From the IMG/VR virus record IMGVR_UViG_3300045970_000794, positions 298,103 through 362,102 of that record: a stretch of DNA of 64,000 nucleotides. One strand, written 5' to 3'. The position numbers and the translations under genes were made by a program. The notes below the pieces were generated by a model. The model saw only the letters and a program-made list of their open reading frames with translations, did not search any database and had not been told where the DNA came from. Positions 3,820-59,932 of the stretch are shown piece by piece (positions within the stretch are counted from its first letter, which is position 1; each line of letters starts with the position of its first letter).

Positions 3820-3911
3820 GATATATAGTTTTAATTGATTAATATAATGCAAAGGTAAGTAAAATATTTTAATCTACCAAATATTATTTAATATATTTTC
3901 AAATTATTTTA

Positions 3912-4574
3912 CTAATGTTGTACGAAACACACGTTATTCTTAGTTATACAGTAAGTACACTCCAAACCACATTTAATGTTTTTACTACTTGTAACAGGGC
4001 AAATAAATGATTTATGATTTGCTTTTAACTCATTGCAATACTCAATACTACCAAAATTCAATTTACCATTGATGAAACTACTTATTAAATTGAAATTGCT
4101 ATTAGTCTTAATAACACTAAAATCTAATAAACTTTCTACCTTGGTATATACATAAAATTTAATATGTGGAAATAAACCAATAATATCATTCCAAAAATCA
4201 ATATATGATTGACTGAAAAAGTCACCACTAGAATGAATCCTTACCACAGTCCTTTTTGTTTCACTTAATTGTGTTACAATTAATTCCTTTAATAAACTTG
4301 GATTGTTTAAAAACAATTCATGATTAACAGTACGATACAATTCAGTATCTACATATTGAACCTCAGCCTTTTTTGCATAGCAACTTGCTTTGCAGTCCAC
4401 ACAATTTAAACAAGTTTTTACACTTGGTAAATCAAAGATAAGAATATTATGTAACTTGCTATTACCATTAACTAATCTATTCTTATTAATATAGATGTAA
4501 TTAAATAGTAATTCACGAGTATTGGTTTGTTTGCTGTAATCTCTGAATGTCCTAGATAAATCAAAATTGTTCAT
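3912..4574 (-). CDS. GP88-family protein (Cys cluster + RIHxSGDF)
   Basis: GNSKL, FDLP..TC..C..C...CYA, VRIHSSGDFFSQSYIDFW, FYVYTK. Confidence 0.75.
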   Translation of the reverse strand: MNNFDLSRTFRDYSKQTNTRELLFNYIYINKNRLVNGNSKLHNILIFDLPSVKTCLNCVDCKASCYAKKAEVQYVDTELYRTVNHELFLNNPSLLKELIVTQLSETKRTVVRIHSSGDFFSQSYIDFWNDIIGLFPHIKFYVYTKVESLLDFSVIKTNSNFNLISSFINGKLNFGSIEYCNELKANHKSFICPVTSSKNIKCGLECTYCITKNNVCFVQH

Positions 4575-37344: not shown

Positions 37345-38439
37345 ATGATAACTAAAACACAAAATTTCATATTAAAAGCAAAGCATATTCATGAAGATAA
37401 GTACGATTATTCATTAGTTGAGTATAATGGTTCTTATTACAAAGTTAGTATAATATGTAAAATACATGGAATATTTAAGCAATCACCAAATAATCATTTA
37501 AATGGGCAAGGCTGTGCTATTTGTGGTCGAATTAAAACACAAGCTAAACAAATGTCTAATGTTAATGATGTTATAGCTAAAGCAAAATATATTCATAAAA
37601 ATAAATATGATTATTCATTAGTTCAATATAAAAATGAAAAAAGTAAAATAAAAATAATATGCCCAACGCATGGTATTTTTGAACAAACACCTGATAATCA
37701 TATTAATAATAAAACTGGGTGTCCAAGTTGTAGTTGTAATAAAAAATTAACACCATTAGAGTATATTACAAAAGTAAATTTAATTCATAAATCCAAATAT
37801 AATTATTTAATTATGAATTATTGTGGTGTGAATAAGAAAATAAAAATAATATGCCCAATTCATGGTGTGTTTGAAATTAAAGCCTCTCACCACGCTAGCG
37901 GTGTTGGTTGCTCTAAATGTTCAAATAAACATAAATATACTACCAATGAATTTATCATTGAGGCTAGTAAAATTCATGGAAGTAAATATAGTTATAAATT
38001 GTCTGAGTATTTAAATGCGAAAACTAAAATAATTATTACTTGTCCAATGCATGGTGATTTCATGCAATCACCAACATCACATTTAAGTGGTAAAGGATGT
38101 CCAACATGTAATGAAAGTAAAGGTGAAAAAGCGATTAGAAATTACTTAAATAAACATAATATTAGCTTTATTCCTCAACATAAATTTAATGATTGTAAAA
38201 ATATTAAACCATTGCCGTTTGATTTCTATCTTCCAGATTATAATACATGCATTGAATACCAAGGTGAACAACATTATAGACCAATTAAACGTTTTGGTGG
38301 TGTTAATGCTCATGAAAAATTAAAAGAAAACGATAACATTAAAAAAGAATACTGCGAATCACACAATATTCTTTTGATTGTCATATCAAATATAAATGAA
38401 GTGATTTATAATTTAAAAAAATTAATCATAAAACCGTAG
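37345..38439 (+). CDS. putative homing endonuclease: DUF723-like zinc repeats + PD-(D/E)xK/Vsr-like nuclease domain
   Basis: Repeats of YDYS..Y...K..IIC..HG.F.Q.P..H..G.GC..C; FDFYLP...IEYQGEQH. Confidence 0.8.
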   Translation: MITKTQNFILKAKHIHEDKYDYSLVEYNGSYYKVSIICKIHGIFKQSPNNHLNGQGCAICGRIKTQAKQMSNVNDVIAKAKYIHKNKYDYSLVQYKNEKSKIKIICPTHGIFEQTPDNHINNKTGCPSCSCNKKLTPLEYITKVNLIHKSKYNYLIMNYCGVNKKIKIICPIHGVFEIKASHHASGVGCSKCSNKHKYTTNEFIIEASKIHGSKYSYKLSEYLNAKTKIIITCPMHGDFMQSPTSHLSGKGCPTCNESKGEKAIRNYLNKHNISFIPQHKFNDCKNIKPLPFDFYLPDYNTCIEYQGEQHYRPIKRFGGVNAHEKLKENDNIKKEYCESHNILLIVISNINEVIYNLKKLIIKP

Positions 38440-41460: not shown

Positions 41461-41865
41461 TTATTCGATATCAATATAAGTATCTGGTAATGTTATGAAA
41501 TCCCAGTACTTTGCAGCGTTTTCAGTCATTCGAGTGTATATTACTTTTTCTCTAATCCATTCACTGTATATAGTATGAGCTAACATTTTGTCCAATCCGA
41601 ATGTTTCACTTAATAATGCAGTAATTTTATCCGAATCAAAATATTTTGTTTTACTAGTATCAGAATCGTGTAAACCTAAATCATTCTTCTTGAAAATATA
41701 AACCATCGAACCTTTTACCACAACATATGAATGCCGTTCAATCAGTCGAACCGCTTTATAATATAATTGAGCTGGGATGCCTAGACATTCCAACTCAATA
41801 TATCTTTTTTTAATTAATAAATTTCGCTCATCTTGTTTCATTATTCTTGGTAATGAACAGCCCAA
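41461..41865 (-). CDS. hypothetical protein
   Basis: 134-aa ORF. Confidence 0.6.
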   Translation of the reverse strand: MGCSLPRIMKQDERNLLIKKRYIELECLGIPAQLYYKAVRLIERHSYVVVKGSMVYIFKKNDLGLHDSDTSKTKYFDSDKITALLSETFGLDKMLAHTIYSEWIREKVIYTRMTENAAKYWDFITLPDTYIDIE

Positions 41866-42716
41866 TTATTAGAAATGGCTTTACGTTGAAGTATCTTAAT
41901 TGAATTATCCCTTATCTGTCTGATTCTCTCACGACTTCTTTCTAAGATTACACCAATCTCAGCCAATGTTTTTGGCTTTTCACCAGTTAAACCATATGAT
42001 AGTATGATTACCTCACGCTGAACTGGTGATAATACACTAAGCATTTTCTTAATTTTTTCAGTTTCATCTTCGGAAGTTAAGATGTAATCAGTTAATTCGC
42101 AGTTATTATCTGCTGTGATATCAACCAATGTACTACCATCCTCATCAAGTTTAAAGTCTAATGATTTAACTTTAGTTTGATTGATTTCATAGATTTGCTG
42201 AAGCTTATCTAATGTGATAGTACCTTCCAACAATTCGAAAAGTTCATCTTCACTTGGTTCACGATTAAATTTAATCTCAAATTTATTTTGAGCATTTCTA
42301 ACCTTATTAGCATCCATCAGTTTATTATTAGGAATCCTAATTAAACGGCCGTAATTGCTTTTATAAACCATAATACTTTGTCTAATCCACCATACCGCAT
42401 ACGAAATGAATTTAAATCCAGTGCTTGGGTCAAACTTTTTAGTTGCACTGATTAAACCCTCATTTCCTTCATTTACCAAATCTTCTAATTTACACCTATC
42501 ATCCACAAATAATTTTGCAACACTTACCACAAATCGTAAGTTAGATGTAATTAATATTTCATGCGCTACTTTATCACCATTAATTGCTCTTTCAGCATAC
42601 ATTAATTCTTCTTTAGGTGTTAATAATGGATATTTACTGATATCTTGTAAATATCTTTTAAATGCCTCTGAATCGTGCACTGTTATTTTAGGTGTAATAA
42701 CCAAAGTTTTCATCAT
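41841..42716 (-). CDS. RpoD/SigA-like sigma-70 factor (no region 1.1)
   Basis: YLQDI..YPLLT..EE, SNLRFVVSVAK, DLVNEGN.GL, GFKFISYAVWWIRQSI, TLAEIG..L.RSRERIRQI. Confidence 0.92.
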   Translation of the reverse strand: MMKTLVITPKITVHDSEAFKRYLQDISKYPLLTPKEELMYAERAINGDKVAHEILITSNLRFVVSVAKLFVDDRCKLEDLVNEGNEGLISATKKFDPSTGFKFISYAVWWIRQSIMVYKSNYGRLIRIPNNKLMDANKVRNAQNKFEIKFNREPSEDELFELLEGTITLDKLQQIYEINQTKVKSLDFKLDEDGSTLVDITADNNCELTDYILTSEDETEKIKKMLSVLSPVQREVIILSYGLTGEKPKTLAEIGVILERSRERIRQIRDNSIKILQRKAISNNWAVHYQE

Positions 42717-44710: not shown

Positions 44711-45307
44711 TTACAACTTTATCTTATTATCCTCAAACTCAGCGATTAATTTAATCCTACTCCTACGATGAATACCACGTATGGTTGATGCCTTCATCTT
44801 CAATTCAACAGCAATATCCTTCAATTGAATGGAATCAATTACGTGTCTATTGAAAATAGTCCGTTCCAAATCATTCAATTTAGTATCAATTAATTTCAAC
44901 ATCAATTCAGCATCTACTTGTTGACTATCCTCAAGTTCTTTCTCATTATAGTAACTTAATGATTTATTAGCAATGTCAACCTGACATTCATCACAATAAT
45001 TTAATGCAATATTCTTTTTAACACTCTTACGCCTATATTTATCAATGCAAAAGCATTTGAATAACATATAAGCCCAAGTGATAAATGCACCTTTTTCTGG
45101 GTCAAATTTATCTAAATTATTGAATAATTTAATATAAGCTTCTTGGCACCAATCACTAGCTTCATGAGAATCATTCGCATATTTGTAACATACGATGAAT
45201 AATGTACTATATGTCTTACGATATAATTCATAAAATGCTGAATGTTCACCAGCAATAGCTGATTTAATTACAGAATAGTCAATTAATATAGTGTTTTTAT
45301 ATTCCAT
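44711..45307 (-). CDS. ECF-type sigma factor
   Basis: AF.ELY, A.D..QE.YIKLF..L.KF, F.TW, region-4 HTH (LKDIA.EL). Confidence 0.85.
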   Translation of the reverse strand: MEYKNTILIDYSVIKSAIAGEHSAFYELYRKTYSTLFIVCYKYANDSHEASDWCQEAYIKLFNNLDKFDPEKGAFITWAYMLFKCFCIDKYRRKSVKKNIALNYCDECQVDIANKSLSYYNEKELEDSQQVDAELMLKLIDTKLNDLERTIFNRHVIDSIQLKDIAVELKMKASTIRGIHRRSRIKLIAEFEDNKIKL

Positions 45308-45308
45308 A

Positions 45309-47234
45309 TTAATTATATTTAGATAATTCGAACGCCCTTCTATCCAAAGAAACGCTCTTAACTTTAACCATTATCTCATCACCGAGTTTTAATTTATACC
45401 CACTACTACCAACAACGCAATAGTTTGATACATCTGATGTGAATTGTTCATCGGGAATGATATCACCCAATCTCATCAATCCCTCACATTTAGAATCAGC
45501 TAATTCAACAAATACACCGCTTTCAATTATACCAGTTACCACACCCATGAATATCTTACCAACTTTATCAGCCATATATTCAGTTTGTTTGTATTTAATT
45601 GATTCACGTTCGGCTTTCTGAGCTTTACGTTCTCTTTCAGATAAGTGAGAACATTTACCTTCTAATCGATTACCATTAACATTAAACTTGCTATCTAAGT
45701 ACCTAGTTAATAATCTATGTACCATTATGTCTGGATAACGTCTAATTGGTGATGTGAAATGACAATAATCTTGAAACCCTAAACCATAGTGACCAACATT
45801 ATGTGTTGTGTAGGTTGCTTTAGACATTGTACGAACGATTAATCGGTTAACCATATTTTCCAATGGTTTACCCTCAAGCTCTTTAATTATTTTTTTAAAA
45901 CTAGCTTTAGTATCAGCTGGGTTTTTAGTATTAACTTTTAAATCGAATTGAGCTAAGAATGTTTTTAATTCTTCAATCTTTTCATCATCTGGTAACTCAT
46001 GAGCTCTGTTCACCATCGGTAAACCATTCAATCTAGCGTATTCAGCTACTTTTCTATTAGCTAATAACATATATTCCTCAATCAAATTATTAGAATCCAA
46101 TGATTCCTTCACAATAATTTTAACTGGTTTCTTGTTTTCATCTAATTCGAATTTAAAGCTAGGGCTTTTCATTTCAATAGCACCTTTACTTATTCTAATA
46201 GCTCTCATTTTCTTAGCTAAATCATTTAGTATTACTAAATAATCACCTAAGAATGCACCTGATGGGTCACTAATAAATCTATTATCATCGCCACGGTCAA
46301 TACATTCTTGTGCGCTTTCATATGTAAACCTATGTCTAGAACATATTACAGTTCTACCCATCCAAGTGTTCATAATTTTAGCATCCTTATTCATTGTCAC
46401 AACCACTGAGAAACATAACCTATCTTCAAATGGTTTCAAAGAACAAATGTCATTCGACAAATATTCTGGAATCATTGGTATCACTCTATCAACTAGATAG
46501 ATTGATGTACCACGTGAATATGCCTCAGCATCGATAGATGTTTCTGGTCTTACGTAGTGAGACACATCAGCAATATGAATACCAATTTCATAACAACCCA
46601 TATCAACTTCTCTGAATGATAATGCATCATCAAAGTCTTTAGCATCAACAGGGTCAATCGTGAATGTAGGTACTTTACGGAAATCTCTTCTCTTTTTAAT
46701 TTCACGTTCAGTTATCTCTCTACTGATACCTTCAGCTTCGTCCAATACATCTTGTGGGAATTCGGTTGGTAAACCATATTCTTGGATAATTGCATGCATT
46801 TCAACATCATTATCACCAGCATCACCTAACACTTCAACAATCTTACCTAATGGACATTTATCTTGTGGTCTCCACTCGATTAATTCAGCAATAACTTTCT
46901 GACCATTTGTGGCTCCATTTAAGCGTGTTAGAGGCACGTAAAAGTCAACTGATAGTTTTCTATTATCTGGACGAAAAAATGCGAAATTATCGCTTATATC
47001 AATCCTACCGACAAATTTATCTTTGTATCTCTTAACAACTTTTATAACTTTAGCTTCTAGAGGTCTATCTTGAGACTCTATAACTTTTATTTCAACCGTA
47101 TCTAAATGTAACGCTTGATTAATATTTTCTTTTTGAACATAAAGGTCCTTAGCCATTTCATCCGATTGGAAATATGCTGACCCACTTAAATTCAATGTAA
47201 TTTTACCTTTATAGGTATCCCCTACTTTTATCAT
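45309..47234 (-). CDS. rnr: ribonuclease R
   Basis: FTIDPVDAKDFDDALS, HIADVSHYV, IEEYMLLAN, HFTSPIRRYPD, C-terminal S1. Confidence 0.95.
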   Translation of the reverse strand: MIKVGDTYKGKITLNLSGSAYFQSDEMAKDLYVQKENINQALHLDTVEIKVIESQDRPLEAKVIKVVKRYKDKFVGRIDISDNFAFFRPDNRKLSVDFYVPLTRLNGATNGQKVIAELIEWRPQDKCPLGKIVEVLGDAGDNDVEMHAIIQEYGLPTEFPQDVLDEAEGISREITEREIKKRRDFRKVPTFTIDPVDAKDFDDALSFREVDMGCYEIGIHIADVSHYVRPETSIDAEAYSRGTSIYLVDRVIPMIPEYLSNDICSLKPFEDRLCFSVVVTMNKDAKIMNTWMGRTVICSRHRFTYESAQECIDRGDDNRFISDPSGAFLGDYLVILNDLAKKMRAIRISKGAIEMKSPSFKFELDENKKPVKIIVKESLDSNNLIEEYMLLANRKVAEYARLNGLPMVNRAHELPDDEKIEELKTFLAQFDLKVNTKNPADTKASFKKIIKELEGKPLENMVNRLIVRTMSKATYTTHNVGHYGLGFQDYCHFTSPIRRYPDIMVHRLLTRYLDSKFNVNGNRLEGKCSHLSERERKAQKAERESIKYKQTEYMADKVGKIFMGVVTGIIESGVFVELADSKCEGLMRLGDIIPDEQFTSDVSNYCVVGSSGYKLKLGDEIMVKVKSVSLDRRAFELSKYN

Positions 47235-50912: not shown

Positions 50913-51311
50913 CTAATCTAATTCTAAATGACTAGTTATTTTATCAATTTCATCAGCCCAAAATGGACCAATTCCAACGCAAGTATTTGTTGGATTACCT
51001 TTAAATTCAGTCAACCCAGCATCAGTGATTAAAATTGATGGGATTTTAGCTGATTGTGCGGCCGCATAAATGCTTAATAGTTCAGCTTCATCTTTACATT
51101 TAACAACAATTTTAGTGAATCGGCCATTTAACCAATTGTCCCAAGCACCACCTTTTTTAAGATGTAATATGAATTTACATGGGTCAAGTGTGCGCATAGC
51201 ATTAACTAATACCGCAACTGAAGCATGGGCAACTTGTGCACCATATTTACCACGTCTAACCTTTAAATCATTCCTCCAAACTAAAACCATTTTTGTTTTC
51301 CTATTTTCCAT
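50913..51311 (-). CDS. pth2: peptidyl-tRNA hydrolase, Pth2 family
   Basis: R.DL...GK..AQVAHA, KIVVK, DAGLTE, TCVGIGP, ID.IT..L. Confidence 0.92.
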   Translation of the reverse strand: MENRKTKMVLVWRNDLKVRRGKYGAQVAHASVAVLVNAMRTLDPCKFILHLKKGGAWDNWLNGRFTKIVVKCKDEAELLSIYAAAQSAKIPSILITDAGLTEFKGNPTNTCVGIGPFWADEIDKITSHLELD

Positions 51312-51318
51312 AATAAAA

Positions 51319-52146
51319 TTAAGATTTATATGTTTGATTATCTTTTAAAATTCGTCTTATCAAATAAATACTAATATTAAACATTTCAGATAATTGTTTA
51401 GTAACTTTAAAACCATTATTTTTATATTCACTAATAATTTCGTTAATGACTGCATTATCAAATTCAACATAATTTGGATTCCCACTTTTCAATTTACTAT
51501 TTGACATTAAAATTCTACCATTTTCAGTAATATCAGTACGCTTACCATTAATATCTAATCTTTTTTTACAACTAGAACTAATTAATTTTTTAAATGAATC
51601 AGTTTTATAATAACTATTTTCTGATTGTTTTTTTTTAATTTCATTAGCTTTAATTTCACCATATCTTTCAACATAATTTAATTTTAATTGCTCAATCATT
51701 TTATTTGCTTTTTCTTCACCCCAACGCTCAACAAGTGTTTTATCTTTTTGAAAATCAGATAATTTTTTACGCTGTTCATTAGTAAGTGGCTTGCGAATTT
51801 GTTCTTTTGATTTTTCACCAATAATTCGTTTAGTTTCTTCACTATGCTTCCAGCCACTACAACCATGACCACCTTTAGTTGAATTATATCCTTCACCAAT
51901 AAAAGTATTGTATTTTTCAATATAATAAATTTCTAAATAATTTAAATCATCAACCGATACAACCCCCTCCAATACTTCCCATTCAAAATTATCAGGTCCA
52001 TATTTTTTAATTGCACGATGAAAATGATATTTTGACCCACGCAATGCATTTTTAATGTGTTGATTTTTACGCTCTTCTAATGTTTTAATGGTCTGACCAA
52101 TATATTTCAATCCATTAATTTTGTTTGTTACTAAATAAATTACCAT
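51319..52146 (-). CDS. GIY-YIG homing endonuclease with NUMOD3-like motif
   Basis: VIY..TN..NG.KYIGQT, GYN.T.GG, HSEETKR.I. Confidence 0.88.
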   Translation of the reverse strand: MVIYLVTNKINGLKYIGQTIKTLEERKNQHIKNALRGSKYHFHRAIKKYGPDNFEWEVLEGVVSVDDLNYLEIYYIEKYNTFIGEGYNSTKGGHGCSGWKHSEETKRIIGEKSKEQIRKPLTNEQRKKLSDFQKDKTLVERWGEEKANKMIEQLKLNYVERYGEIKANEIKKKQSENSYYKTDSFKKLISSSCKKRLDINGKRTDITENGRILMSNSKLKSGNPNYVEFDNAVINEIISEYKNNGFKVTKQLSEMFNISIYLIRRILKDNQTYKS

Positions 52147-52229: not shown

Positions 52230-52745
52230 TTATTTAAAATAAATATCTTTATATAAATCGATAAAATAATTCCCAATATAATAAGCCAAATCTTCACTTT
52301 TTAAATAAAGGGCCGAGGGAACAATCATATCACTAATATTGTAATCAGTGCTATAACAGGAAAACACACCGCTATTTTTATTAAAATAAGCGAAATATTT
52401 CATTTGAGAGTCATTATCCCAATCTGGATACCAGCCTTCATTTAATGCTTCGATAATTATACTTAATTTATAATAAGCAATTAAATGTTTATCTTTAAGC
52501 AATTTTAAGTCAATTGGTATTATATTAAGTTTAATACAAGCATCTTCAAACGAAGTAACACCCAATTTTTCACCAAAAATATATAAATTAGCTTTTATTA
52601 TTTTATTTCGTTCATTTAAATCGCCAACGCCTAAAATATCAAATATTTCATCTGAGTTTTTAATTGATATATAACTGAACTTTTCTTTAATTGTGGTAAT
52701 CCACCCATCAAAAGTTTGGTGTGGATTATAAAAATCTGGTTTCAT
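52230..52745 (-). CDS. DGR target protein 2
   Basis: Contains VR2; paralog of 53885-54436 (SFEDAC..L, ALNEGWYPD). Confidence 0.9.
   Translation of the reverse strand: MKPDFYNPHQTFDGWITTIKEKFSYISIKNSDEIFDILGVGDLNERNKIIKANLYIFGEKLGVTSFEDACIKLNIIPIDLKLLKDKHLIAYYKLSIIIEALNEGWYPDWDNDSQMKYFAYFNKNSGVFSCYSTDYNISDMIVPSALYLKSEDLAYYIGNYFIDLYKDIYFK
52312..52373 (-). repeat. DGR variable repeat VR2
   Basis: 8 differences from TR, all at TR adenines. Confidence 0.93.
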
Positions 52746-53691
52746 TTATATGTTTTTTAAGTAAATGTTTTCCGTTACAATGTTTAATCCAACCATTATA
52801 TGATGCAAATGACTTTTTATTAGGATTATTTTTCATCATCCGAATGAAATTTATTTTAATACCTTTTCGTAATAATATATGGGTATGATAAAATTTATAC
52901 CCAACAAAATCAACACCTCTATCTTTAACTGGAAATATCTGATAATTAGATTTTATTTTTAATAATAGTTTAGATTCAATATACCACTTAATATCACCTA
53001 ATAATTTATGTAATTCACTTTTACTAGATGAGAATATTACCATATCATCAGCATATCTAAAATAATATTTAACTAATTTTTCTTCTTTTAACCAATGGTC
53101 AAAATATGTTAAATATAAATTAGCAAAATACTGACTAGTATAATTACCTATTGGTAGACCATCCGTTGAATCAATAATCTCATCTAATAACCATAATAAA
53201 TCACTATCTTTTATTTTTCGTCTAATTATTGATTTTAGTATATCATGACTAATACTAGGATAAAATTTACTAATATCTAATTTTAAACAATATTCAGTAT
53301 TTTCAATATCTTTTAATGATTTTTTAACCGCATTAGCGGCACCATGTATTCCCCTACCTTTTATGCAACTATAAGTGTTACTAGTAAATATATTTACAAA
53401 TATCGGTTCCAAAATATTCATAATCGCATGATGGATAATTCTATCTGGATAATATGGTAAGGAAAAAATTAAACGTTCTTTACCCTCATTTATAATAAAG
53501 GTTTTATATTTAGATGTTTTAAATGTTTTATTAATTAATGATTCATGTAATCTTAAAATATTTAAATTTCTATCTTTATCAAATGAAATAACATCACATC
53601 TATTTTTCTTACCTTTTCTAGCTTTAGAATCAGCCAATTCTAAATTTTCAATAGATATTATTTTATCATATAAATTATTAAATCGTTTCAT
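52726..53691 (-). CDS. DGR reverse transcriptase
   Basis: KLDISKFYPSI, GLPIGNYTSQYFAN, RYADD; start MKRFNNLY at 53691. Confidence 0.95.
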   Translation of the reverse strand: MKRFNNLYDKIISIENLELADSKARKGKKNRCDVISFDKDRNLNILRLHESLINKTFKTSKYKTFIINEGKERLIFSLPYYPDRIIHHAIMNILEPIFVNIFTSNTYSCIKGRGIHGAANAVKKSLKDIENTEYCLKLDISKFYPSISHDILKSIIRRKIKDSDLLWLLDEIIDSTDGLPIGNYTSQYFANLYLTYFDHWLKEEKLVKYYFRYADDMVIFSSSKSELHKLLGDIKWYIESKLLLKIKSNYQIFPVKDRGVDFVGYKFYHTHILLRKGIKINFIRMMKNNPNKKSFASYNGWIKHCNGKHLLKKHINETRFL

Positions 53692-53803
53692 CCCTTTGTT
53701 ATTAATAGTTACGGTCTCTAATGATACTAGCACCTATTTAAAATTTAAATTTTTTACCATGTTGGTAAGGTTTATGTTATTAAGTAAGATTTAATAACAA
53801 GTT

Positions 53804-53865
53804 GCTGAGGGAACATTCATATTACTATTATTGTAATTAGTGTTATAATATGAAAACACACCGCT
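53804..53865 (-). ncRNA. DGR template repeat (TR)
   Basis: Intergenic AAY-rich copy: AGCGGTGTGTTTTCATATTATAACACTAATTACAATAATAGTAATATGAATGTTCCCTCAGC. Confidence 0.93.
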
Positions 53866-53884
53866 AATAACATAAACCAGAATT

Positions 53885-54436
53885 TTACATATAAAGTATC
53901 TCATACTCTCTAAGCGCAATTTTAATAGCATGTTTAGCTAATCCTTCGCTTTTTAAATAAAGGGCCGAGGGAACATTCATATTACTAATATTGAAATAAG
54001 TGTAATAATATGAAAACACACCGCTTTTAATTTCAAACCAATTATAATATTTATAATCATTTTTAGTAAAATCTGGATACCAACCTTCATTTAATGCTTT
54101 AATAATCGTTTTTAATTTTTTATATGCAATATCATTTGGTGTATCATATTGTAAACTAAATACTCCGTTCTGGTCTACATTAAGAACATTACAAGCATCC
54201 TCAAATGACTTAACTCGCTCAATAATGTTTTTTTCTTGTTTGAAAAACTTAGATAAAACAATTTTTTGTTTCTCATCTGATGCTGCAAACATTTCATTTA
54301 CTTCATTCTCAGTGAATTCAATGAACTCATCAAAATGATTCCGACTAGCATATTCTTCCAATTTTTTTTTCCAACTAAAACATGCAATGTCATGTATTAA
54401 TTTTAAATTTTTTCTAGATATTTGTTGTGTTTTCAT
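53885..54436 (-). CDS. DGR target protein 1
   Basis: Contains VR1; first gene after promoter at 54459. Confidence 0.9.
   Translation of the reverse strand: MKTQQISRKNLKLIHDIACFSWKKKLEEYASRNHFDEFIEFTENEVNEMFAASDEKQKIVLSKFFKQEKNIIERVKSFEDACNVLNVDQNGVFSLQYDTPNDIAYKKLKTIIKALNEGWYPDFTKNDYKYYNWFEIKSGVFSYYYTYFNISNMNVPSALYLKSEGLAKHAIKIALREYEILYM
53964..54025 (-). repeat. DGR variable repeat VR1
   Basis: 5 differences from TR, all at TR adenines. Confidence 0.93.
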
Positions 54437-54501
54437 AATTTAATTATTTAATTTAATGCAAAGATATAAAAAATATTTTAATCTACCAAATAAAAATACA
54501 A

Positions 54502-55020
54502 CTATTTTTTTGGTATTGGTTTAAGCATAATAATTAATCTAGTACCTTCAAAAACTGGGGTTTTTTCAGCGATACAAACACCAGAGAGTTCATTAATCAC
54601 TTTCTCTAATATTTGATACCCGAATTCTTTATGAGACATTTCACGGCCTTTAAAAAAGACTGAGGTTTTAACTAAATTACCTTTAATTAACCACTCCTTA
54701 GCATGTTTAAGTTTAAAATTTAAATCATTCTCATCGATAGCTGGTCTTAATCTTAATTCTTTAACCTCAACCTTAACTGGTTTCTTCTCAGCTTTTTTCT
54801 TTTCGTAAATATATTTTTCAAAATCAACTACTTTACAGATTGAGATTTCTGGATTATTAGCATTTATTTCTAATAAATCTAGGTCTAGGTCATCAGCAAT
54901 TTTAATAGCTTCTTGAAGTGAGTAAATACCCACAGTTACATTATCACCAACAAGTCTAACTTGTTTAGCTCTAATATCGGAATTGATTTTATACCGATTA
55001 AATTTATTTTTTTCTTTCAT
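54502..55020 (-). CDS. infC: translation initiation factor IF-3
   Basis: IN..IRA..VRLVG, A...DLDL.EI, VKELRLRP.IDE.D..FK, FFKGRE. Confidence 0.93.
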   Translation of the reverse strand: MKEKNKFNRYKINSDIRAKQVRLVGDNVTVGIYSLQEAIKIADDLDLDLLEINANNPEISICKVVDFEKYIYEKKKAEKKPVKVEVKELRLRPAIDENDLNFKLKHAKEWLIKGNLVKTSVFFKGREMSHKEFGYQILEKVINELSGVCIAEKTPVFEGTRLIIMLKPIPKK

Positions 55021-55137
55021 TTAATTTTTTAGAAATTATTATTTAAATACAAAAGTATAAAAATAAATACAATAATGCAAATTATTTATTTTTTTTATAA
55101 TTTTATTATATTTATAAGTATAAACAAATTATAACAT

Positions 55138-55308
55138 ATGGAAAAAAATAGGCAGCGGTCACGTAAAAATGATGAAAATAAAACAGATTCAATGACAATT
55201 AGAATTGAACCTAAATTAAAAGAGCAATATTTGAAATTTTGTGAAGATAATGGATATTCATATGGAAAACGGTTGAGATTATTAATTAAAAAAGATTTAG
55301 ATAAATGA
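55138..55308 (+). CDS. small ribbon-helix-helix protein (56 aa, not in ORF track)
   Basis: MTIRIEPKLKEQY..FC..NG.S...RLR.LI; ATGA overlap with next gene. Confidence 0.65.
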   Translation: MEKNRQRSRKNDENKTDSMTIRIEPKLKEQYLKFCEDNGYSYGKRLRLLIKKDLDK

Positions 55309-56177
55309 GTAAAAAATTAACAATTGATGAGATAATTAATAAAATTATTGATAATGATTACGATTTTTCACAATCAAATTATGTATCATTAGATAAAAAA
55401 ATAATCGTAATTGATATTGACGGGTTTGAGCATTTAATAAGACCAGATAGTTTATTAGTTGGAAATAAATTAAATATTAAAAGTGTTATCAATAAAGAAA
55501 ATTATTTAATTAAAAAATTTAATAAAATTCACAAAAATTTATTTGATTATTCTAAATTCACATATATAAATTCTGACACTAAAATTGATATCATATGTCA
55601 GACCCACGGTATTTTTAAACAAACTATTAATAATCATTTAAGAGGTAAAGGATGTCCTAAATGTAATGGTAAAAATAAAAGTAATAATGATATTATCAAT
55701 GAGTTTAAATCAACTCATGGTAATAAATACAATTATTCAAAAGTAACATATAGTGGGATTAAAAATAAAGTAATTATTATATGTCCAAAACATGGTGAAT
55801 TTAAACAATCACCAGAGGAACATATTAAAGGTTGTGGATGTCCAATCTGTAAAGAATCTAATGGTGAACGTAAAATTAGGTTATTTTTAGAATCAAATAA
55901 TGTTTCATATATACCACAACATAAATTTAATGATTGTAAAAATATATTAAGTTTACCATTTGACTTCTATTTACCTGATTATAATACATGTATCGAATAT
56001 CAAGGTGAACAGCATTATAGACCTATCGAATATTTTGGTGGTATTAAACAATTCAATAAACAAATAATTAATGATAAAATAAAAATGGAATATTGCCAAA
56101 ACAACAATATTCCATTAATAATGATTAAATATGGTGAAAACATATTTGAAACATTAAAAAAATTTTCTAATATTTAA
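55305..56177 (+). CDS. putative homing endonuclease (DUF723-like repeats + nuclease domain)
   Basis: Same architecture as 37345-38439. Confidence 0.8.
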   Translation: MSKKLTIDEIINKIIDNDYDFSQSNYVSLDKKIIVIDIDGFEHLIRPDSLLVGNKLNIKSVINKENYLIKKFNKIHKNLFDYSKFTYINSDTKIDIICQTHGIFKQTINNHLRGKGCPKCNGKNKSNNDIINEFKSTHGNKYNYSKVTYSGIKNKVIIICPKHGEFKQSPEEHIKGCGCPICKESNGERKIRLFLESNNVSYIPQHKFNDCKNILSLPFDFYLPDYNTCIEYQGEQHYRPIEYFGGIKQFNKQIINDKIKMEYCQNNNIPLIMIKYGENIFETLKKFSNI

Positions 56178-57741
56178 ATGTTGTGAAATCGCCATTGGAA
56201 AATGTGATTAATTGAGCCTTACCATCTTGATGTATTATACAATGTGTTTGAGACCAACTACTTGGGCCTTCATTATACCCCACTCTAAGGTTTGTTGATG
56301 TTCCAACTTGTAGAACACCATCCTTTCTACCGCAACTATGGCTATGTCCAATAATCATCTTAGTATTTAATCTTCTAAATTGTTCTAATGAACCCCTAGA
56401 ACCATTAGCACCTACATCACCATGTTGAGCTAATTCCCATTTTTTAACTACATAACTATCTGAGCGATTTAACGTCTTAATTTTAGGGTAGTGTTTCTTA
56501 ATTATCCATGGAATTACACCATCTTTAGCTTCACCACTCAATATCGCAGCACTATATTGCATATATTCCAATGAATTTTTTGGGGTATTAGTTTTACGCC
56601 AATCGGTATTGATTAACCAACGGTCAACAAAATCATCATGGTTACTTCTAACAATAACAACATTATAGTTTTTGAATTTATCTAATTCGACTAACATTTC
56701 ATCAACTTCGTTTTTCAATGAATTTTTATTATTCATTTCTTTCTCATATTGAGTGAATGGGTTATCCATTTCATGATGATTAATTGAATGACCATTGAAT
56801 ATATCATGCATAATAACATGTTGTGGCTTTAATCTATTCAATAATTCTAACGTTTTTTCAATAACTTCATTGTCTTGGTCACCAACATGGTAATCACCCA
56901 AAACTATAGCGGCCGCTGAATCAATCGTTGTAACTTCACCTTTATCAACTCTATAAAATAAATCAGTAAAAGCACCAGCTTCATTGGCAGTTACCTGTCT
57001 TGCAAAAAATATTTCATCATCTTTTATTTCAACCACTACAAACCCGTATGTATGATGAAACTCACCCTTTTTACCAGCTTTAGAATCAGTGTAATCCTTA
57101 ATGGTGACAGCACCAGTGGTCATCATCATTTTAGGCTTTTGCGTATGTAACACAGGAATTGACATCATTTGCACTTTAGGTGCACCAAAAATACAAGAAT
57201 TAATACCTGACACACCTTCTAACCCAGACATTGGATTTACAGCTGTTGGTTGAATCTTAAAATCACCCATAATAGAAACGTACTTATGAACATTATGTCT
57301 AGCCGCATCTAAATATGGTAGGACTTCTTTTTCCCAATACTCATAATCTTTATCTGTGAAGATTGATGTTGGGTTTTTGTATCTACCAGCGATGATGTGG
57401 ATATCCGCATCTAAAAACTCAGCATATGCTTCCATATTTCTTAAAAGCCTTGTATGCACAGCGGTATTATTCTGGGCCCAACTAATAAGGAATCTTTTCT
57501 TTTCTTTATTAAAAACTCGCTGTTTAGCAAGTTCATATTGTTCTGAAGGTGTTTCAGTTACTTTTTCTTTAAAATGTAATCGTTCAAACCATTTTCGAAT
57601 AGTTCGTTCCGATACACCTAATTGAAGACCCAAATTAAATGCAATTTTTTCAACAGTTAAATTTGAATCTTTCCGACCATAATAAGCGTTTTTTAATGTT
57701 ATCTTATCTTGTTCAGTTAATTTTTTAAAACTTTTTTTCAT
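56167..57741 (-). CDS. metallophosphoesterase with N-terminal HTH
   Basis: GDYH, HD, SNHD, HGD, GHSH; VSERTIRKW. Confidence 0.8.
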   Translation of the reverse strand: MKKSFKKLTEQDKITLKNAYYGRKDSNLTVEKIAFNLGLQLGVSERTIRKWFERLHFKEKVTETPSEQYELAKQRVFNKEKKRFLISWAQNNTAVHTRLLRNMEAYAEFLDADIHIIAGRYKNPTSIFTDKDYEYWEKEVLPYLDAARHNVHKYVSIMGDFKIQPTAVNPMSGLEGVSGINSCIFGAPKVQMMSIPVLHTQKPKMMMTTGAVTIKDYTDSKAGKKGEFHHTYGFVVVEIKDDEIFFARQVTANEAGAFTDLFYRVDKGEVTTIDSAAAIVLGDYHVGDQDNEVIEKTLELLNRLKPQHVIMHDIFNGHSINHHEMDNPFTQYEKEMNNKNSLKNEVDEMLVELDKFKNYNVVIVRSNHDDFVDRWLINTDWRKTNTPKNSLEYMQYSAAILSGEAKDGVIPWIIKKHYPKIKTLNRSDSYVVKKWELAQHGDVGANGSRGSLEQFRRLNTKMIIGHSHSCGRKDGVLQVGTSTNLRVGYNEGPSSWSQTHCIIHQDGKAQLITFSNGDFTTFKY

Positions 57742-57742
57742 T

Positions 57743-58642
57743 TTAATTTTTTTTTAAAAGACTTATTATTTTATTAGGAATCTCATTATATTTAATTATA
57801 ATTAGATTTATATTATTTTTATCACAATATTTTTTTTTAATCACATCATTTAATTTAACATCAATTAAATACTTTTCACCACCAAAAAATTCAATTGGCT
57901 TATAATGTTGAATTCCGTTAAATTCGATGCATGTATTATAATCTGGTAAATAAAAATCAAATGGTAATGGTAGTTTATTTCTACATTCATTAAATTTATG
58001 TTGCGGAATGAATTTGATATTATTTTCCAATAATAGTAGTCGAATATTATTTTCACCTTTACTTTCTTTACAGATTGGACAACCAACACCTTTCAAATGA
58101 TTATGGGGCGTTTGGATAAATTCACCATGTTTAGGGCAAATAATTGTTATTTTGACATGTGATGTTATGTACTTAATTTTAGAATAGTCATATATTTCAC
58201 CATGAATTAACTTAGCTTTTTCAATAAAACACTTATTACCAACCCTTCTATTAAGAAAAGTACATTTTTCACAACGGCTACCTTTTAAATGATTATTTGG
58301 GGTTTGTTCAAACTCACCATGGGTGGGACATATTATTTTAATATTAGTGTTAAAATTAATATAATTAACCAATGAGTAATCATATTCATCACCATGAATT
58401 AACTTAGCTTTTTCGATAAAACACTTATTACCTAATCTCTGTTTTACATAACTACATTTTTTACATCCATCACCACTTAAATGAGCACTAGCCCTTTGAT
58501 TAAATATACCATGCTCTTTGCAAATAATATTCACATAATTTTTACTTTCAGTATAATTAACTAATGAATAATCATATTTTTCACCATGAATTAACTTAGC
58601 TTTTTCTATAAACTTTAAATTTTTTTCTAACATACTTACCAT
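57743..58642 (-). CDS. putative homing endonuclease (DUF723-like repeats + nuclease domain)
   Basis: FIEKAKLIHG..YDYS x3; FDFYLP...IEFNG.QH. Confidence 0.8.
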   Translation of the reverse strand: MVSMLEKNLKFIEKAKLIHGEKYDYSLVNYTESKNYVNIICKEHGIFNQRASAHLSGDGCKKCSYVKQRLGNKCFIEKAKLIHGDEYDYSLVNYINFNTNIKIICPTHGEFEQTPNNHLKGSRCEKCTFLNRRVGNKCFIEKAKLIHGEIYDYSKIKYITSHVKITIICPKHGEFIQTPHNHLKGVGCPICKESKGENNIRLLLLENNIKFIPQHKFNECRNKLPLPFDFYLPDYNTCIEFNGIQHYKPIEFFGGEKYLIDVKLNDVIKKKYCDKNNINLIIIKYNEIPNKIISLLKKN

Positions 58643-58891: not shown

Positions 58892-59932
58892 TTACCCCTT
58901 ACCCTTCAAATCCTCAATACTATAGTTGTTGTTGATAGCTATCAACGCTTTTGCGATATGTTTCGATACGCTAACAACTTCAATTTTTTCTTTTCCTCGT
59001 TGTTCATCAAGATTGATATCATGCTCCATACTAGTAAATGATGCTAAATCATAATTCAATGAATCACTAACAATCAGTTTTTCTAGTTTAGAATTACCAA
59101 TATTGTAATAAGCTTTTCCCGATAATACGCCATGAGTAGCAATCGCTCTAACTGATGCACCACCTTCATCAATGATAAGGTCAGCCGCTTTACATAAAGT
59201 ACCAGCAGTATCAACTATATCATCAACAAGAATAACATGTTTTTCAGCAACATTACCAATAAGAACCATATCATCAATTTCATTGGCTTTAACTCTGGTT
59301 TTGTCAATAACAACATAACCCATTTGTATGGCGAACTTTTCTTTTAATAAATCTCGTAAGTATTTAACTCTTTTAGATGCACCAGCATCTGGAGCACATA
59401 GAACCCATTCTTTACCAGATTTATCTTCTTTTACCATTTCAGCAATGTGATGAGCAAATAAGTATCGACCTTCAATATGTGTTAATGGTATCTTGAAAAA
59501 TCCTTGAATCTGGTCCGCATGTAATTCAAACGTAACTACAGCATCAGCACCACGATTTTCAATCATTTCGGCGATTACCTTAGCACCAATTGGTGCTCTA
59601 GCTCTATCCTTTTTATCTTGACGAGCATATGGGAAATATGGTAATATAACAATAATCTCTTTAGCAGATGCTCTTCTAACAGCATCAATGGCTAGATTAA
59701 GAGCCATTATTTTATCGGATGAATTTGGTGATGTCATTATGTACACCCTAGCACCACGAACACTATCTTTAATATCAACAATTAACTCGCCATCAGAGAA
59801 CTTCTTAACATAAATCCCACCCTTAGTTAATGTACTACTGGTCGAATATTTCTTACATTGAGTTTGGAACTCAGTAATAACATTGAAAACTAAATCTTCT
59901 CTTTGGTCAACGGATAATAAAATTGATTTCAT
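58892..59932 (-). CDS. prs: ribose-phosphate pyrophosphokinase
   Basis: FSDGE, PYFPYARQDKK, ELHADQIQGFF, APDAG, LVDDIVDTAGT, ATHG. Confidence 0.95.
   Translation of the reverse strand: MKSILLSVDQREDLVFNVITEFQTQCKKYSTSSTLTKGGIYVKKFSDGELIVDIKDSVRGARVYIMTSPNSSDKIMALNLAIDAVRRASAKEIIVILPYFPYARQDKKDRARAPIGAKVIAEMIENRGADAVVTFELHADQIQGFFKIPLTHIEGRYLFAHHIAEMVKEDKSGKEWVLCAPDAGASKRVKYLRDLLKEKFAIQMGYVVIDKTRVKANEIDDMVLIGNVAEKHVILVDDIVDTAGTLCKAADLIIDEGGASVRAIATHGVLSGKAYYNIGNSKLEKLIVSDSLNYDLASFTSMEHDINLDEQRGKEKIEVVSVSKHIAKALIAINNNYSIEDLKGKG

What the first reader, a model, noticed from the sequence alone, without database searches (positions are those of the whole stretch)
53885..54436. DGR targets look intracellular, VR is short and internal, and no Avd is encoded
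Seen: the targets are 171 and 183 aa paralogs with different N-termini and no signal or fibre features. About 26 codons follow each VR. The locus sits between infC and pth2 under a host-type promoter, and there is no room for an avd gene. Established: characterised phage DGRs usually diversify receptor-binding proteins, use longer TRs and often need Avd. Inference: these could be diversified early proteins that bind host factors (counter-defence or takeover) in an accessory-free DGR.
Basis: inference. Interest (0 to 1): 0.7.

Follow-up and report, generated by a model that had tools for sequence, protein, structure and literature searches.

The report
Avd-less phage DGR, small non-lectin targets
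A 362-kb pond jumbo phage, probably of Bacteroidota, carries an intact mutagenic retroelement that rewrites a 12-residue patch in two small soluble proteins whose fold matches no solved structure; this cassette type is common but undescribed in Bacteroidota phages and sits among replication genes rather than tail genes.

Summary
On the minus strand lie infC, target 1 (183 aa), a 66-nt TR, an RT, target 2 (171 aa), a GIY-YIG gene and pth2. All 11 TR-to-VR differences in the 58-nt core fall on TR adenines. After the VR come 25 and 26 residues. No gap could hold an avd gene, and two Avd HMMs find nothing in the complete genome.

The RT is 52-62% identical to crAss-like phage DGR RTs. One of these, crAssphage LMMB, is placed in the published avd-less lineage 3. 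Mutagenic tracts of 30-100 bp are normal.

The new part is the target. It belongs to a large uncharacterised phage family (1,689 cluster representatives). AlphaFold models are confident (pLDDT 96), yet no solved chain reaches Z 5, so no C-type lectin match. Of 162 related loci, 99 carry the same RT type. In 53 viral RT-bearing loci, 84% of 1,448 TR/VR mismatches fall on adenines. Neighbouring genes are replication and recombination genes.

An intracellular binding role is supported by context only. A counter-defence role is untested. DGR activity could not be checked at read level. Most relatives, but not this phage, have an SSB-like gene coupled to the RT.

The parts
55050..55081 (-). Bacteroidota-type promoter-like motif (TTTG-N20-TACTTTTG) upstream of infC
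   Evidence: Pattern scan; the motif is about 3-fold enriched in the genome over shuffles
54502..55020 (-). Phage-encoded translation initiation factor IF-3 (infC), upstream neighbour
   Evidence: Pfam IF3_N 2.8e-20 and IF3_C 3.5e-29
54459..54490 (-). Bacteroidota-type promoter-like motif (TTTG-N20-TATCTTTG), 22 nt upstream of the target 1 ATG; likely drives target 1, TR, RT and target 2
   Evidence: no terminator-like site on the minus strand of the cassette
53885..54436 (-). DGR target 1, 183 aa. An N-terminal module (about residues 1-67) is followed by a conserved C-terminal VR-bearing domain (about 68-183)
   Evidence: AF2 pLDDT 95.9; phrog_11581
53960..54025 (-). VR1, encoding residues 138-159 (SGVFSYYYTYFNISNMNVPSA). 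It covers the second strand of a beta hairpin and the following loop. Its 3' end is IMH-like (CCCTCGGCCC)
53800..53865 (-). Template repeat (TR). It would encode SGVFSYYNTNYNNSNMNVPSA, with six AAY codons and 20 A in the 58-nt core. Its 3' end is IMH* (CCCTCAGCAAC)
   Evidence: the only TR in the genome
53692..53799 (-). Conserved spacer between TR and RT (presumed DGR RNA 3' element). It holds the hairpin TTACC-AACAT-GGTAA at 53754-53770 and the conserved block TAGGTGNTAGTAT
   Evidence: Alignment of 7 related loci and RNAalifold, (two compensatory pairs only, so weak)
52726..53691 (-). DGR reverse transcriptase, 321 aa from the ATG (the ORF opens at GTG 53733, 335 aa). It has LPIGNYTSQYF and YADD motifs
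   Evidence: Pfam RVT_1 9e-21; phrog_1423 4e-123; 52-62% identity to crAss-like phage DGR RTs; the only RT in the genome
52230..52745 (-). DGR target 2, 171 aa, a paralog with a different N-terminus. Its start overlaps the RT end by 20 nt
   Evidence: this N-terminus type recurs in other phages (P0058, P0050, P0132)
52308..52373 (-). VR2, encoding residues 125-146 (SGVFSCYSTDYNISDMIVPSA), with the same IMH-like end as VR1
51319..52146 (-). GIY-YIG homing-endonuclease-like gene between the cassette and pth2 (a neighbour, not part of the DGR)
   Evidence: Pfam GIY-YIG 4.5e-10
50913..51311 (-). Peptidyl-tRNA hydrolase PTH2, downstream neighbour
   Evidence: Pfam PTH2 1.4e-31

Best explanation
This is an intact diversity-generating retroelement of the avd-less, crAss-like (lineage-3-like) RT type, arranged target1-TR-RT-target2 and probably transcribed as one unit from a Bacteroidota-type promoter.

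Proposed mechanism. The RT copies the TR RNA and misreads its adenines. The cDNA replaces the homologous 58-66 nt in two paralogous genes, with the G/C-rich IMH (CCCTCGGCCC in the VRs, CAGCAAC in the TR) fixing direction. This rewrites 12 codons (residues 143-154 of target 1), which allows about 3.5e10 protein variants per target by my codon count.

The targets. The variable patch lies on the second strand and following loop of a beta hairpin. The hairpin sits in a compact alpha/beta domain that is closed by a conserved C-terminal helix. The domain matches no solved fold and is not detectably a C-type lectin. The targets are soluble proteins of a large Bacteroidota-phage family whose cassettes sit in replication and recombination modules. 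I therefore infer that they act inside the infected cell as diversified binding proteins against a variable partner, such as a host defence or other host factor, or a competing phage.

Shown: the DGR anatomy, the adenine bias, the absence of Avd homologs, the family, its fold and its context.
Inferred: current activity, co-transcription, intracellular action and what the proteins bind.

My estimates: real DGR with this anatomy about 0.9; non-virion intracellular role about 0.6; specifically counter-defence about 0.35.
For: Adenine-specific differences: 11 of 11 in the 58-nt core. In 53 related viral loci, 1,214 of 1,448 mismatches over 89 TR-VR pairs fall on TR adenines.

RT: intact, with DGR motifs, and nearest to crAss-like DGR RTs. 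The one examined, cr52_1, is also arranged target-TR-RT without avd (PMC7290462).

Single system: one TR, two VRs and one RT in the genome.

No Avd: two HMMs find nothing in a complete genome.

Target family: 1,689 representatives at E<=1e-3. The VR block has entropy 3.05 bits against 1.63 for the scaffold, and contains no K or E, as expected from AAY-codon mutagenesis.

Models and fold searches: pLDDT 95.9 and 96.3. No chain reaches Z 5 among 48,161 PDB representatives; the best Foldseek PDB E-value is 0.58; no Swiss-Prot match.

Localisation: no membrane or signal segment.

Context: neighbours in related viral loci are exonuclease, helicase, DNA polymerase, RecT, SSB and methyltransferase genes, with no tail family among the top PHROGs. 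In this window the neighbours are sigma factors, nucleases, a T5 A1-like protein, infC and pth2.

Host: 79 bacterial loci are almost all from Bacteroidota, and the promoter motif fits that phylum.
Against: No read-level evidence of ongoing diversification. Only assembled contigs were available. A second pond sample carries VR1 and the TR with zero differences, and VR2 is simply not covered.

No expression data and no virion proteomics, so a virion location is not excluded. Jumbo-phage structural genes are often scattered.

In LoVEphage the same TR serves a tail collar fibre and a member of this small-protein family. Both proteins could therefore face the same extracellular ligand.

No GC-rich hairpin follows the VRs (z-scores 0.4 and 0.7), unlike the Bordetella phage model. 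Target recognition is unexplained.

Failure to match a lectin fold is negative evidence from predicted models.
Confidence: 0.6

Rival explanations
1. The small targets are virion-borne adhesins (tail-tip, whisker or decoration proteins) encoded away from the tail module. On this reading the DGR serves host-range switching as in classical phage DGRs.
For: The RT lineage otherwise diversifies tail proteins (cr52_1 tail protein; LMMB tail-collar fibre, PMC7290462). In LoVEphage one TR matches both the tail collar fibre VR and the small-family protein 14 kb away. The VR ends in the same VGSRL-type strand as the crAss tail VR. Structural genes of jumbo phages are dispersed.
Against: No similarity to any fibre, lectin or Ig fold. 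Similarity to the LoVEphage tail protein is confined to the VR itself. In about 50 smaller, modular phage contigs the cassette lies among replication and recombination genes, not tail genes. There is no anchoring or trimerisation domain, and many family members are only about 115 aa.
Confidence: 0.2
2. The element is not truly accessory-free. It depends on an unrecognised helper: a divergent Avd-like protein, a phage or host single-stranded-DNA-binding protein, or another host factor.
For: Of 99 related RT genes, 82 are followed by a roughly 100-aa, mostly basic ORF on the same strand in all 82 cases (median offset -4 nt; found without an RT in only 1 of 162 loci). That ORF has OB-fold, phi29-SSB-like structural neighbours. 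Avd proteins are poorly conserved (PMC5758913), so HMM negatives are weak. A 362-kb phage has hundreds of unannotated ORFs.
Against: No homolog of that ORF exists in this genome (best tblastn E 0.048), nor in the nearest jumbo-type relatives that have DNA left after the RT (L003, L010-L014). No Avd HMM match. Wu et al. also found no remote avd in avd-less DGRs (PMC5758913).
Confidence: 0.3
3. The cassette is a decaying or currently silent DGR. On this reading the TR/VR differences record past activity and the two targets now evolve as ordinary genes.
For: VR1 and the TR are identical in a second pond sample. VR1 differs from the TR at only 4 core adenines. Homing-endonuclease genes crowd the locus. 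A relative on a 352-kb contig has its RT gene interrupted by an Endonuclease_7 ORF.
Against: The RT ORF is intact with catalytic YADD. Both targets are intact. The TR keeps six AAY codons and both VRs keep a perfect IMH. The two VRs differ from each other at 9 core positions, all TR adenines. Contigs report consensus only and drop minor variants.
Confidence: 0.15

Closest known systems
crAss-like phage DGRs (crAssphage LMMB, cr52_1 and others; LMMB is placed in lineage 3 of Wu et al. 2018)
   Same: Closest RTs, at 52-62% identity. Same order target-VR(IMH)-TR(IMH*)-RT, no avd, and a TR directly upstream of the RT (PMC7290462). Bacteroidota hosts. The VR ends in a V-G-S-R-L type strand encoded by the IMH.
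   Different: There the target is a 400-490-aa tail or tail-collar fibre protein with a CLec3-type lectin domain and a near-terminal VR. Here the targets are two 171-183-aa soluble proteins with no detectable lectin fold, a 25-26-residue helix after the VR, a second target downstream of the RT, and a position outside any structural module.
Bordetella phage BPP-1 DGR (mtd-avd-TR-brt)
   Same: Adenine-specific mutagenic retrohoming from an invariant TR to a VR. AAY-rich TR. IMH/IMH* asymmetry at the 3' end.
   Different: BPP-1 needs Avd, and its Mtd tail-fibre tip is a C-type lectin with the VR at the C-terminus (PMC5758913). From my own knowledge, BPP-1 has a 134-bp TR and a GC-rich hairpin after the VR. 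Here there is no Avd homolog, the TR is about 66 nt, no significant hairpin follows the VR, and the target is not a lectin or fibre.
Quimbyviridae DGR with a second, non-structural target (Benler et al. 2021, PMC8008677)
   Same: A Bacteroidota-phage DGR that mutates a protein encoded away from the structural genes, in a region with conflict-related genes. The authors made the same inference of a role in phage-host conflict.
   Different: The Quimbyvirus non-structural target still contains a C-type lectin domain and accompanies a structural target. Here both targets are non-lectin and no structural target exists in the genome.
phrog_11581 and the uncharacterised phage proteins of BFVD, AFDB and the ESM Atlas (for example LoVEphage QVQ57199.1)
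   Same: Same protein family and fold: PHROG E 3e-18; BFVD TM up to 0.86; Atlas clusters 75-79% viral.
   Different: None has an assigned function, and I found no paper that describes the family as a DGR target.

Membership tests
Diversity-generating retroelement (DGR) | Reverse transcriptase of the DGR type with an intact catalytic YxDD and the [LIV]GxxxSQ motif | tested here: met
   RVT_1 9e-21; the sequence shows LPIGNYTSQYF and YADD. phrog_1423 4e-123. 52-62% identity to annotated crAss-like DGR RTs. Scores lie below the NCBIfam cut-offs for group II intron, retron and DRT reverse transcriptases.
Diversity-generating retroelement (DGR) | A TR/VR repeat pair whose differences fall on TR adenines | tested here: met
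   11 of 11 core mismatches at A (P 1e-2 and 2.6e-4). In related loci, 1,214 of 1,448.
Diversity-generating retroelement (DGR) | IMH in the VR and a non-identical IMH* in the TR at the 3' end | tested here: met
   VR CCCTCGGCCC against TR CCCTCAGCAAC. Both VRs are identical here, and the element is conserved in relatives.
Diversity-generating retroelement (DGR) | Ongoing diversification in a population | tested here: inconclusive
   Only Logan contigs were available. VR1 is identical in a second sample and VR2 is uncovered.
Avd-dependent DGR (Bordetella type, architecture B) | An avd (four-helix-bundle, PF05635 / TIGR02436) gene in the cassette or genome | tested here: not met
   No room in the cassette. 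Zero matches in the complete genome with both models, while positive controls matched.
Avd-less lineage 3 / architecture A DGRs (Wu et al. 2018) | RT groups with lineage-3 RTs; core order target-TR-RT; no accessory gene | tested here: met
   The best matches are crAss-like RTs; one of them, LMMB, is placed in lineage 3 by PMC7290462. The order and the lack of avd are confirmed. I built no RT tree, so the placement rests on similarity.
Avd-less lineage 3 / architecture A DGRs (Wu et al. 2018) | [quoted passage not shown] | tested here: not met
   Only the IMH-encoded V(G/P)S(R/A)L end is shared. hhalign of the family profile against a CLec3-type tail C-terminus aligns 14 columns at probability 1.5%. 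No lectin fold match.
C-type lectin-fold DGR variable proteins (Mtd, TvpA, AvpA, TaqVP) | The VR-bearing domain adopts the C-type lectin fold | tested here: not met
   Whole-protein and domain-only AF2 models (pLDDT 95.9 and 96.3) were searched against 48,161 PDB representatives. No chain reaches Z 5 (best for the VR-bearing domain 3.5) and no lectin is listed. Foldseek PDB best E 0.58. This is negative evidence from predictions.
Phage tail fibre / receptor-binding protein | Component of the virion tail | not testable with these tools
   No similarity to tail families. The context is non-structural. Virion proteomics is needed.
SUKH / SMI1-KNR4 immunity-protein superfamily | Profile or fold match to SUKH domains | tested here: not met
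   One AFDB cluster labelled SMI1/KNR4 at E 8e-4, TM 0.45/0.55. None of 117 family members hits a SUKH Pfam model, and the Pox_C4_C10 hit (19.5 bits, below cut-off) is in one member only. No PDB SUKH structure among the matches.

The most novel reading that the evidence does not exclude
Bacteroidota phages, from 40-kb prophages to this 362-kb jumbo phage, use an avd-less DGR to hypermutate a dedicated non-lectin scaffold expressed inside the cell. This would be a phage-encoded, antibody-like repertoire of intracellular binders aimed at fast-evolving host defence proteins or rival phages. In most members the DGR would be assisted by an RT-coupled OB-fold SSB-like protein instead of Avd.
Probability: 0.3. 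Interest if true: 0.85.

Novelty: new variant of a known kind. Interest (0 to 1): 0.55.

Why it matters
Current surveys state that DGR variable regions sit at protein C-termini in C-type lectin folds, and that phage DGRs serve adsorption (PMC8144416; bioRxiv 10.1101/2025.11.01.686033). This cassette type departs from that picture in three ways:
- The variable patch sits on a different, compact scaffold.
- A conserved helix is encoded after the IMH.
- The genes sit in replication modules.

It is also frequent: 315 viral and 157 bacterial stretches encode a relative of the target. If the targets act inside the cell, phages would be using targeted hypermutation for conflicts that come after entry. 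The small, confidently modelled scaffold could also become a second natural framework for DGR-based protein engineering. Several cultured Bacteroidota carry related prophage cassettes, so the question can be tested directly.

Tried and rejected
- Megablast of the locus against 50,697 phage records: no match.
- Sigma-70 promoter and terminator scan: no signal above shuffles.
- Single-protein scan of viral contigs: nothing. The scan worked only with an alignment of close relatives.
- Pox_C4_C10 (Pfam E 6e-4, below cut-off) and a SMI1/KNR4-labelled AFDB cluster looked like a lead to SUKH immunity proteins. I rejected it because no other family member repeats the hit and no fold support exists.
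- PDB profile search, NCBIfam and PADLOC: nothing for the targets.
- Read-level check of VR variation: only contigs were served and they were uninformative.
- DNA hairpin downstream of the VRs, as in BPP-1: not significant.
- My first two automated TR finders picked the neighbouring paralog's VR instead of the TR and gave a false lack of adenine bias. Restricting the search to the last 215 nt before the RT corrected this.
- No tRNA genes in the window.
- I did not run complex prediction, because no specific binding pair is claimed.

Full report
WHAT IS THERE

The window is the last 64 kb of a 362,102-bp virus record with 127-bp exact terminal repeats, rated complete. It has about 30% G+C and comes from a pond metagenome.

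On the minus strand lie, in order:
- infC (54502-55020)
- a 183-aa ORF (53885-54436)
- a 151-nt gap
- a reverse transcriptase ORF (52726-53733 from GTG; more likely 321 aa from the ATG at 53691)
- a 171-aa ORF that overlaps the RT end by 20 nt (52230-52745)
- a GIY-YIG endonuclease gene (51319-52146)
- pth2 (50913-51311)

The two small ORFs are paralogs over their C-terminal 128 residues (45% identity, E 4e-26) and have unrelated N-termini.

IT IS A DGR

A 66-nt intergenic repeat (TR, 53800-53865) recurs inside both small genes (VR1 53960-54025; VR2 52308-52373) and nowhere else in the genome.

In the 58-nt core, VR1 differs from the TR at 4 positions and VR2 at 7. All 11 are TR adenines, of which there are 20 in 58 nt (P 1e-2 and 2.6e-4).

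The TR would encode SGVFSYYNTNYNNSNMNVPSA, with six AAY codons. By my own codon count, adenine-to-any-base changes allow about 3.5e10 variants over 12 codons.

At the 3' end both VRs read CCCTCGGCCC where the TR reads CCCTCAGCAAC. This is the IMH/IMH* asymmetry that gives DGRs their direction.

The RT has the LPIGNYTSQYF and YADD motifs. It matches phrog_1423 at 4e-123 and is the only RT in the genome.

The stretch between TR and RT is strongly conserved among relatives. It includes a short hairpin (TTACC-AACAT-GGTAA, 53754-53770) with one compensatory change in a relative. Covariation support is thin.

- About 26 codons after each VR: confirmed, 25 and 26 residues.
- No signal or membrane segment: confirmed.
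- No room for avd: confirmed by the gap sizes.
- Avd elsewhere: two Avd-family HMMs (PF05635, TIGR02436) find nothing in the complete genome, while their control genomes score.
- Host-type promoter: the sigma-70 scan is uninformative. A Bacteroidota-type -33/-7 motif lies just upstream of target 1 and of infC. It occurs 78 times in the genome against 14-30 in shuffles. Its minus-strand copies concentrate at 280-340 kb.
- Host: homologs in bacterial genomes are almost all from Bacteroidota. The host is therefore very probably a member of that phylum.

WHICH PARTS ARE ALREADY KNOWN

The RT's nearest annotated relatives are the DGR RTs of crAss-like phages, at 52-62% identity. In cr52_1 the order is tail protein, TR, RT, without avd.

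Morozova et al. describe the same order for crAssphage LMMB and place its RT in lineage 3 of Wu et al. (PMC7290462). That lineage 'notably lacks avd', and 29% of 372 DGRs have no accessory gene (PMC5758913). Wu et al. also searched for remote avd genes and found none.

The mutagenic part of TRs spans about 30-100 bp in that survey.

A missing Avd and a short TR are therefore features of a known DGR lineage, not novelties.

WHAT IS NOT DESCRIBED: THE TARGET

No Pfam, NCBIfam or PADLOC family fits. Only phrog_11581 (function unknown) matches.

An exhaustive phmmer search finds 1,689 cluster representatives at E<=1e-3 and 303 at <=1e-10. The consensus is LNEGWxPDWxNxNExKYYPWF...GFS-[about 12 variable]-VGSRLCFKSxELAxYA.

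Across the family the 12-residue block is hypervariable (3.05 bits against 1.63 for the scaffold). It is rich in Y, S, T and D, has no K or E, and almost no Q, M or W. This is the repertoire AAY mutagenesis allows.

AlphaFold2 models are very confident, both for the whole protein (pLDDT 95.9, pTM 0.83) and for the C-domain alone (pLDDT 96.3, pTM 0.90). They show helices, a long beta hairpin (129-137 and 140-149), a loop and a 19-residue C-terminal helix. The VR covers the second strand and the loop.

Fold searches:
- Foldseek against PDB: best E 0.8 for the whole protein and 0.58 for the domain.
- Exhaustive alignment to 48,161 PDB representatives: no Z>=5. Best values are 4.6 on the N-terminal module and 3.5 on the VR domain. 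The tool's notes say typical unmatched models still reach Z 7-8.
- No C-type lectin, Ig or fibre fold appears.
- Swiss-Prot models: nothing.
- AFDB clusters, ESM Atlas and BFVD return only unnamed proteins, mostly viral and including crAss-like phages.

The literature states that annotated VR regions are 'systematically' C-type lectin and C-terminal (PMC8144416). A 2025 gut-virome atlas repeats the lectin and tail picture.

THE CASSETTE TYPE IS WIDESPREAD

- Close homologs (50-56% identity) lie on contigs of 540 kb, 352 kb and 94 kb, with the same target-TR-RT order and adenine-only core differences.
- A pattern scan of IMG/VR found 315 stretches that encode relatives. Of the best 80, 51 carry an RT 53-72% identical to this one within 4 kb.
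- With the TR search confined to the region just before the RT, all 53 loci with a full-length RT match show at least one VR matched to a TR, and 40 show two. Over 89 distinct TR-VR pairs, 1,214 of 1,448 mismatches are at TR adenines; the rest lie mostly in alignment overhangs. The median aligned length is 78 nt.
- In GTDB genomes, 157 stretches encode relatives. The best 79 loci are almost all from Bacteroidota and 47 carry the RT.
- About 40% of family members have no RT nearby, so the scaffold also exists without a DGR.

WHERE THE TARGETS ACT

PHROG matches of 78 flanking genes of RT-bearing viral loci are exonucleases, helicases, DNA polymerases, RecT, a Gp2.5-like SSB, a methyltransferase and QueC. 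No tail family is among the top 25.

In the window, the neighbours within 15 kb are two phage sigma factors, a large nuclease, homing endonucleases, a T5 A1-like 'DNA transfer' protein, PRPP synthetase, infC and pth2.

This supports a non-structural role but does not prove it.

One finding points the other way. In LoVEphage, one TR next to the RT matches both the VR of the tail collar fibre and the VR of a member of this family 14 kb away, in a DNA-metabolism region. The two proteins resemble each other only within the VR.

This shows that the VR is a portable cassette sitting in unrelated scaffolds. It also leaves open that both proteins see the same ligand.

Benler et al. raised the idea of a conflict-related, non-structural phage DGR target for Quimbyviridae. 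Their target was a lectin-domain protein (PMC8008677).

ACCESSORY QUESTION

- Across 162 related loci, 99 have the RT and 83 have a roughly 100-aa ORF (phrog_19665), and 82 loci have both.
- The ORF starts a median of 4 nt before the RT alignment ends and is on the same strand in 82 of 82 cases. It is mostly basic (pI 6.7-9.4 in eight examples).
- It has no Pfam match.
- Its Atlas neighbours are phi29-type SSB and other OB folds.
- This phage and its nearest jumbo-type relatives lack it. There the second target occupies that position.

The jumbo-phage cassette is therefore accessory-free as far as I can see. The wider class may use a non-Avd helper, so 'accessory-free' should be claimed with care.

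ACTIVITY

Only assembled contigs of three pond runs were available. A second sample holds the TR and VR1 with no difference, and VR2 is not covered in the other two runs.

Current activity therefore rests on three points. All parts are intact. The two VRs differ from each other at 9 core positions, all TR adenines. The IMH is perfectly conserved.

VERDICT

The 'no Avd, short TR' surprise dissolves into a known lineage. What remains is a frequent, unstudied DGR target class on a non-lectin scaffold in replication modules of Bacteroidota phages, of which this jumbo phage is a two-target member without a helper gene. Intracellular binding is the best-supported reading (about 0.6). Counter-defence is plausible but untested (about 0.35).

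Noticed in passing
L015:5992-6288, L017:6073-6387, L024:5654-5962 and 80 further related loci (not in the window): A roughly 100-aa, mostly basic ORF (phrog_19665, no Pfam match) abuts the 3' end of the DGR RT in 82 of 99 related cassettes. It occurs without an RT in only 1 of 162 loci. Its Atlas structural neighbours are phi29-type SSB and OB folds. It may be an undescribed DGR accessory protein. It is absent from this jumbo phage.
   Followed up: partly
L001:4992-5576 and L170 (Bacteroides phage LoVEphage MW660583.1): One TR beside the RT matches both the tail collar fibre VR and the VR of the 'hypothetical' protein QVQ57199.1, which lies 14 kb away in a DNA-metabolism region. The published description mentions only the tail gene next to the RT.
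   Followed up: partly
L005:5732-7592 (352-kb contig of a related huge phage): The RT gene next to the target appears split into pieces around an Endonuclease_7 ORF. This could be a homing-endonuclease or intron invasion, or decay of the DGR.
   Followed up: no
window 56167-57741: A 524-aa protein matches phrog_1745 'DNA transfer protein' (T5 A1-like, metallophosphoesterase) at 6e-155. It lies about 6-8 kb from the genome end, which recalls the T5 pre-early region.
   Followed up: no
window 41841-42716 and 44711-45307: Two phage-encoded RNA polymerase sigma-factor-like genes (phrog_351 3.5e-53; phrog_1740 6.8e-18) lie next to a 641-aa nuclease (45309-47234).
   Followed up: no
window 51319-52146, 55305-56177, 57743-58642, 37345-38439: There is a dense set of homing-endonuclease-like genes around the DGR: GIY-YIG, two DUF4379/DUF723 zinc-finger repeat proteins with similar C-termini, and an HNH gene. 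Part of the genome's first 5 kb (3826-4181) recurs at about 79% identity in the window, at about 38020-38375 and, inverted, at about 57878-58153.
   Followed up: no
window 54502-55020, 50913-51311, 58892-59932: The phage carries translation and nucleotide auxiliary genes close together: IF-3, an archaeal/eukaryotic-type peptidyl-tRNA hydrolase (PTH2), and a 346-aa ORF that reads by eye like ribose-phosphate pyrophosphokinase (not scanned; a relative's locus, L007, has such a gene near its cassette). No tRNA gene lies in the 64-kb window.
   Followed up: partly
window 53885-54230 (target 1 residues 1-70): The N-terminal module of target 1 recurs as a separate domain in longer phage proteins (P0081, P0114, P0133 and others). 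There it is followed by an unrelated C-terminal domain that ends ...CLIPTKKK. Its function is unknown.
   Followed up: no
window 53692-53865 and relatives (alignment A6): RNAalifold pairs the 3' part of the TR (ATACTAATAC) with a conserved downstream block (GTGTTAGTAT). If real, this would fold the template against the spacer. Only two pairs covary among seven close sequences.
   Followed up: partly
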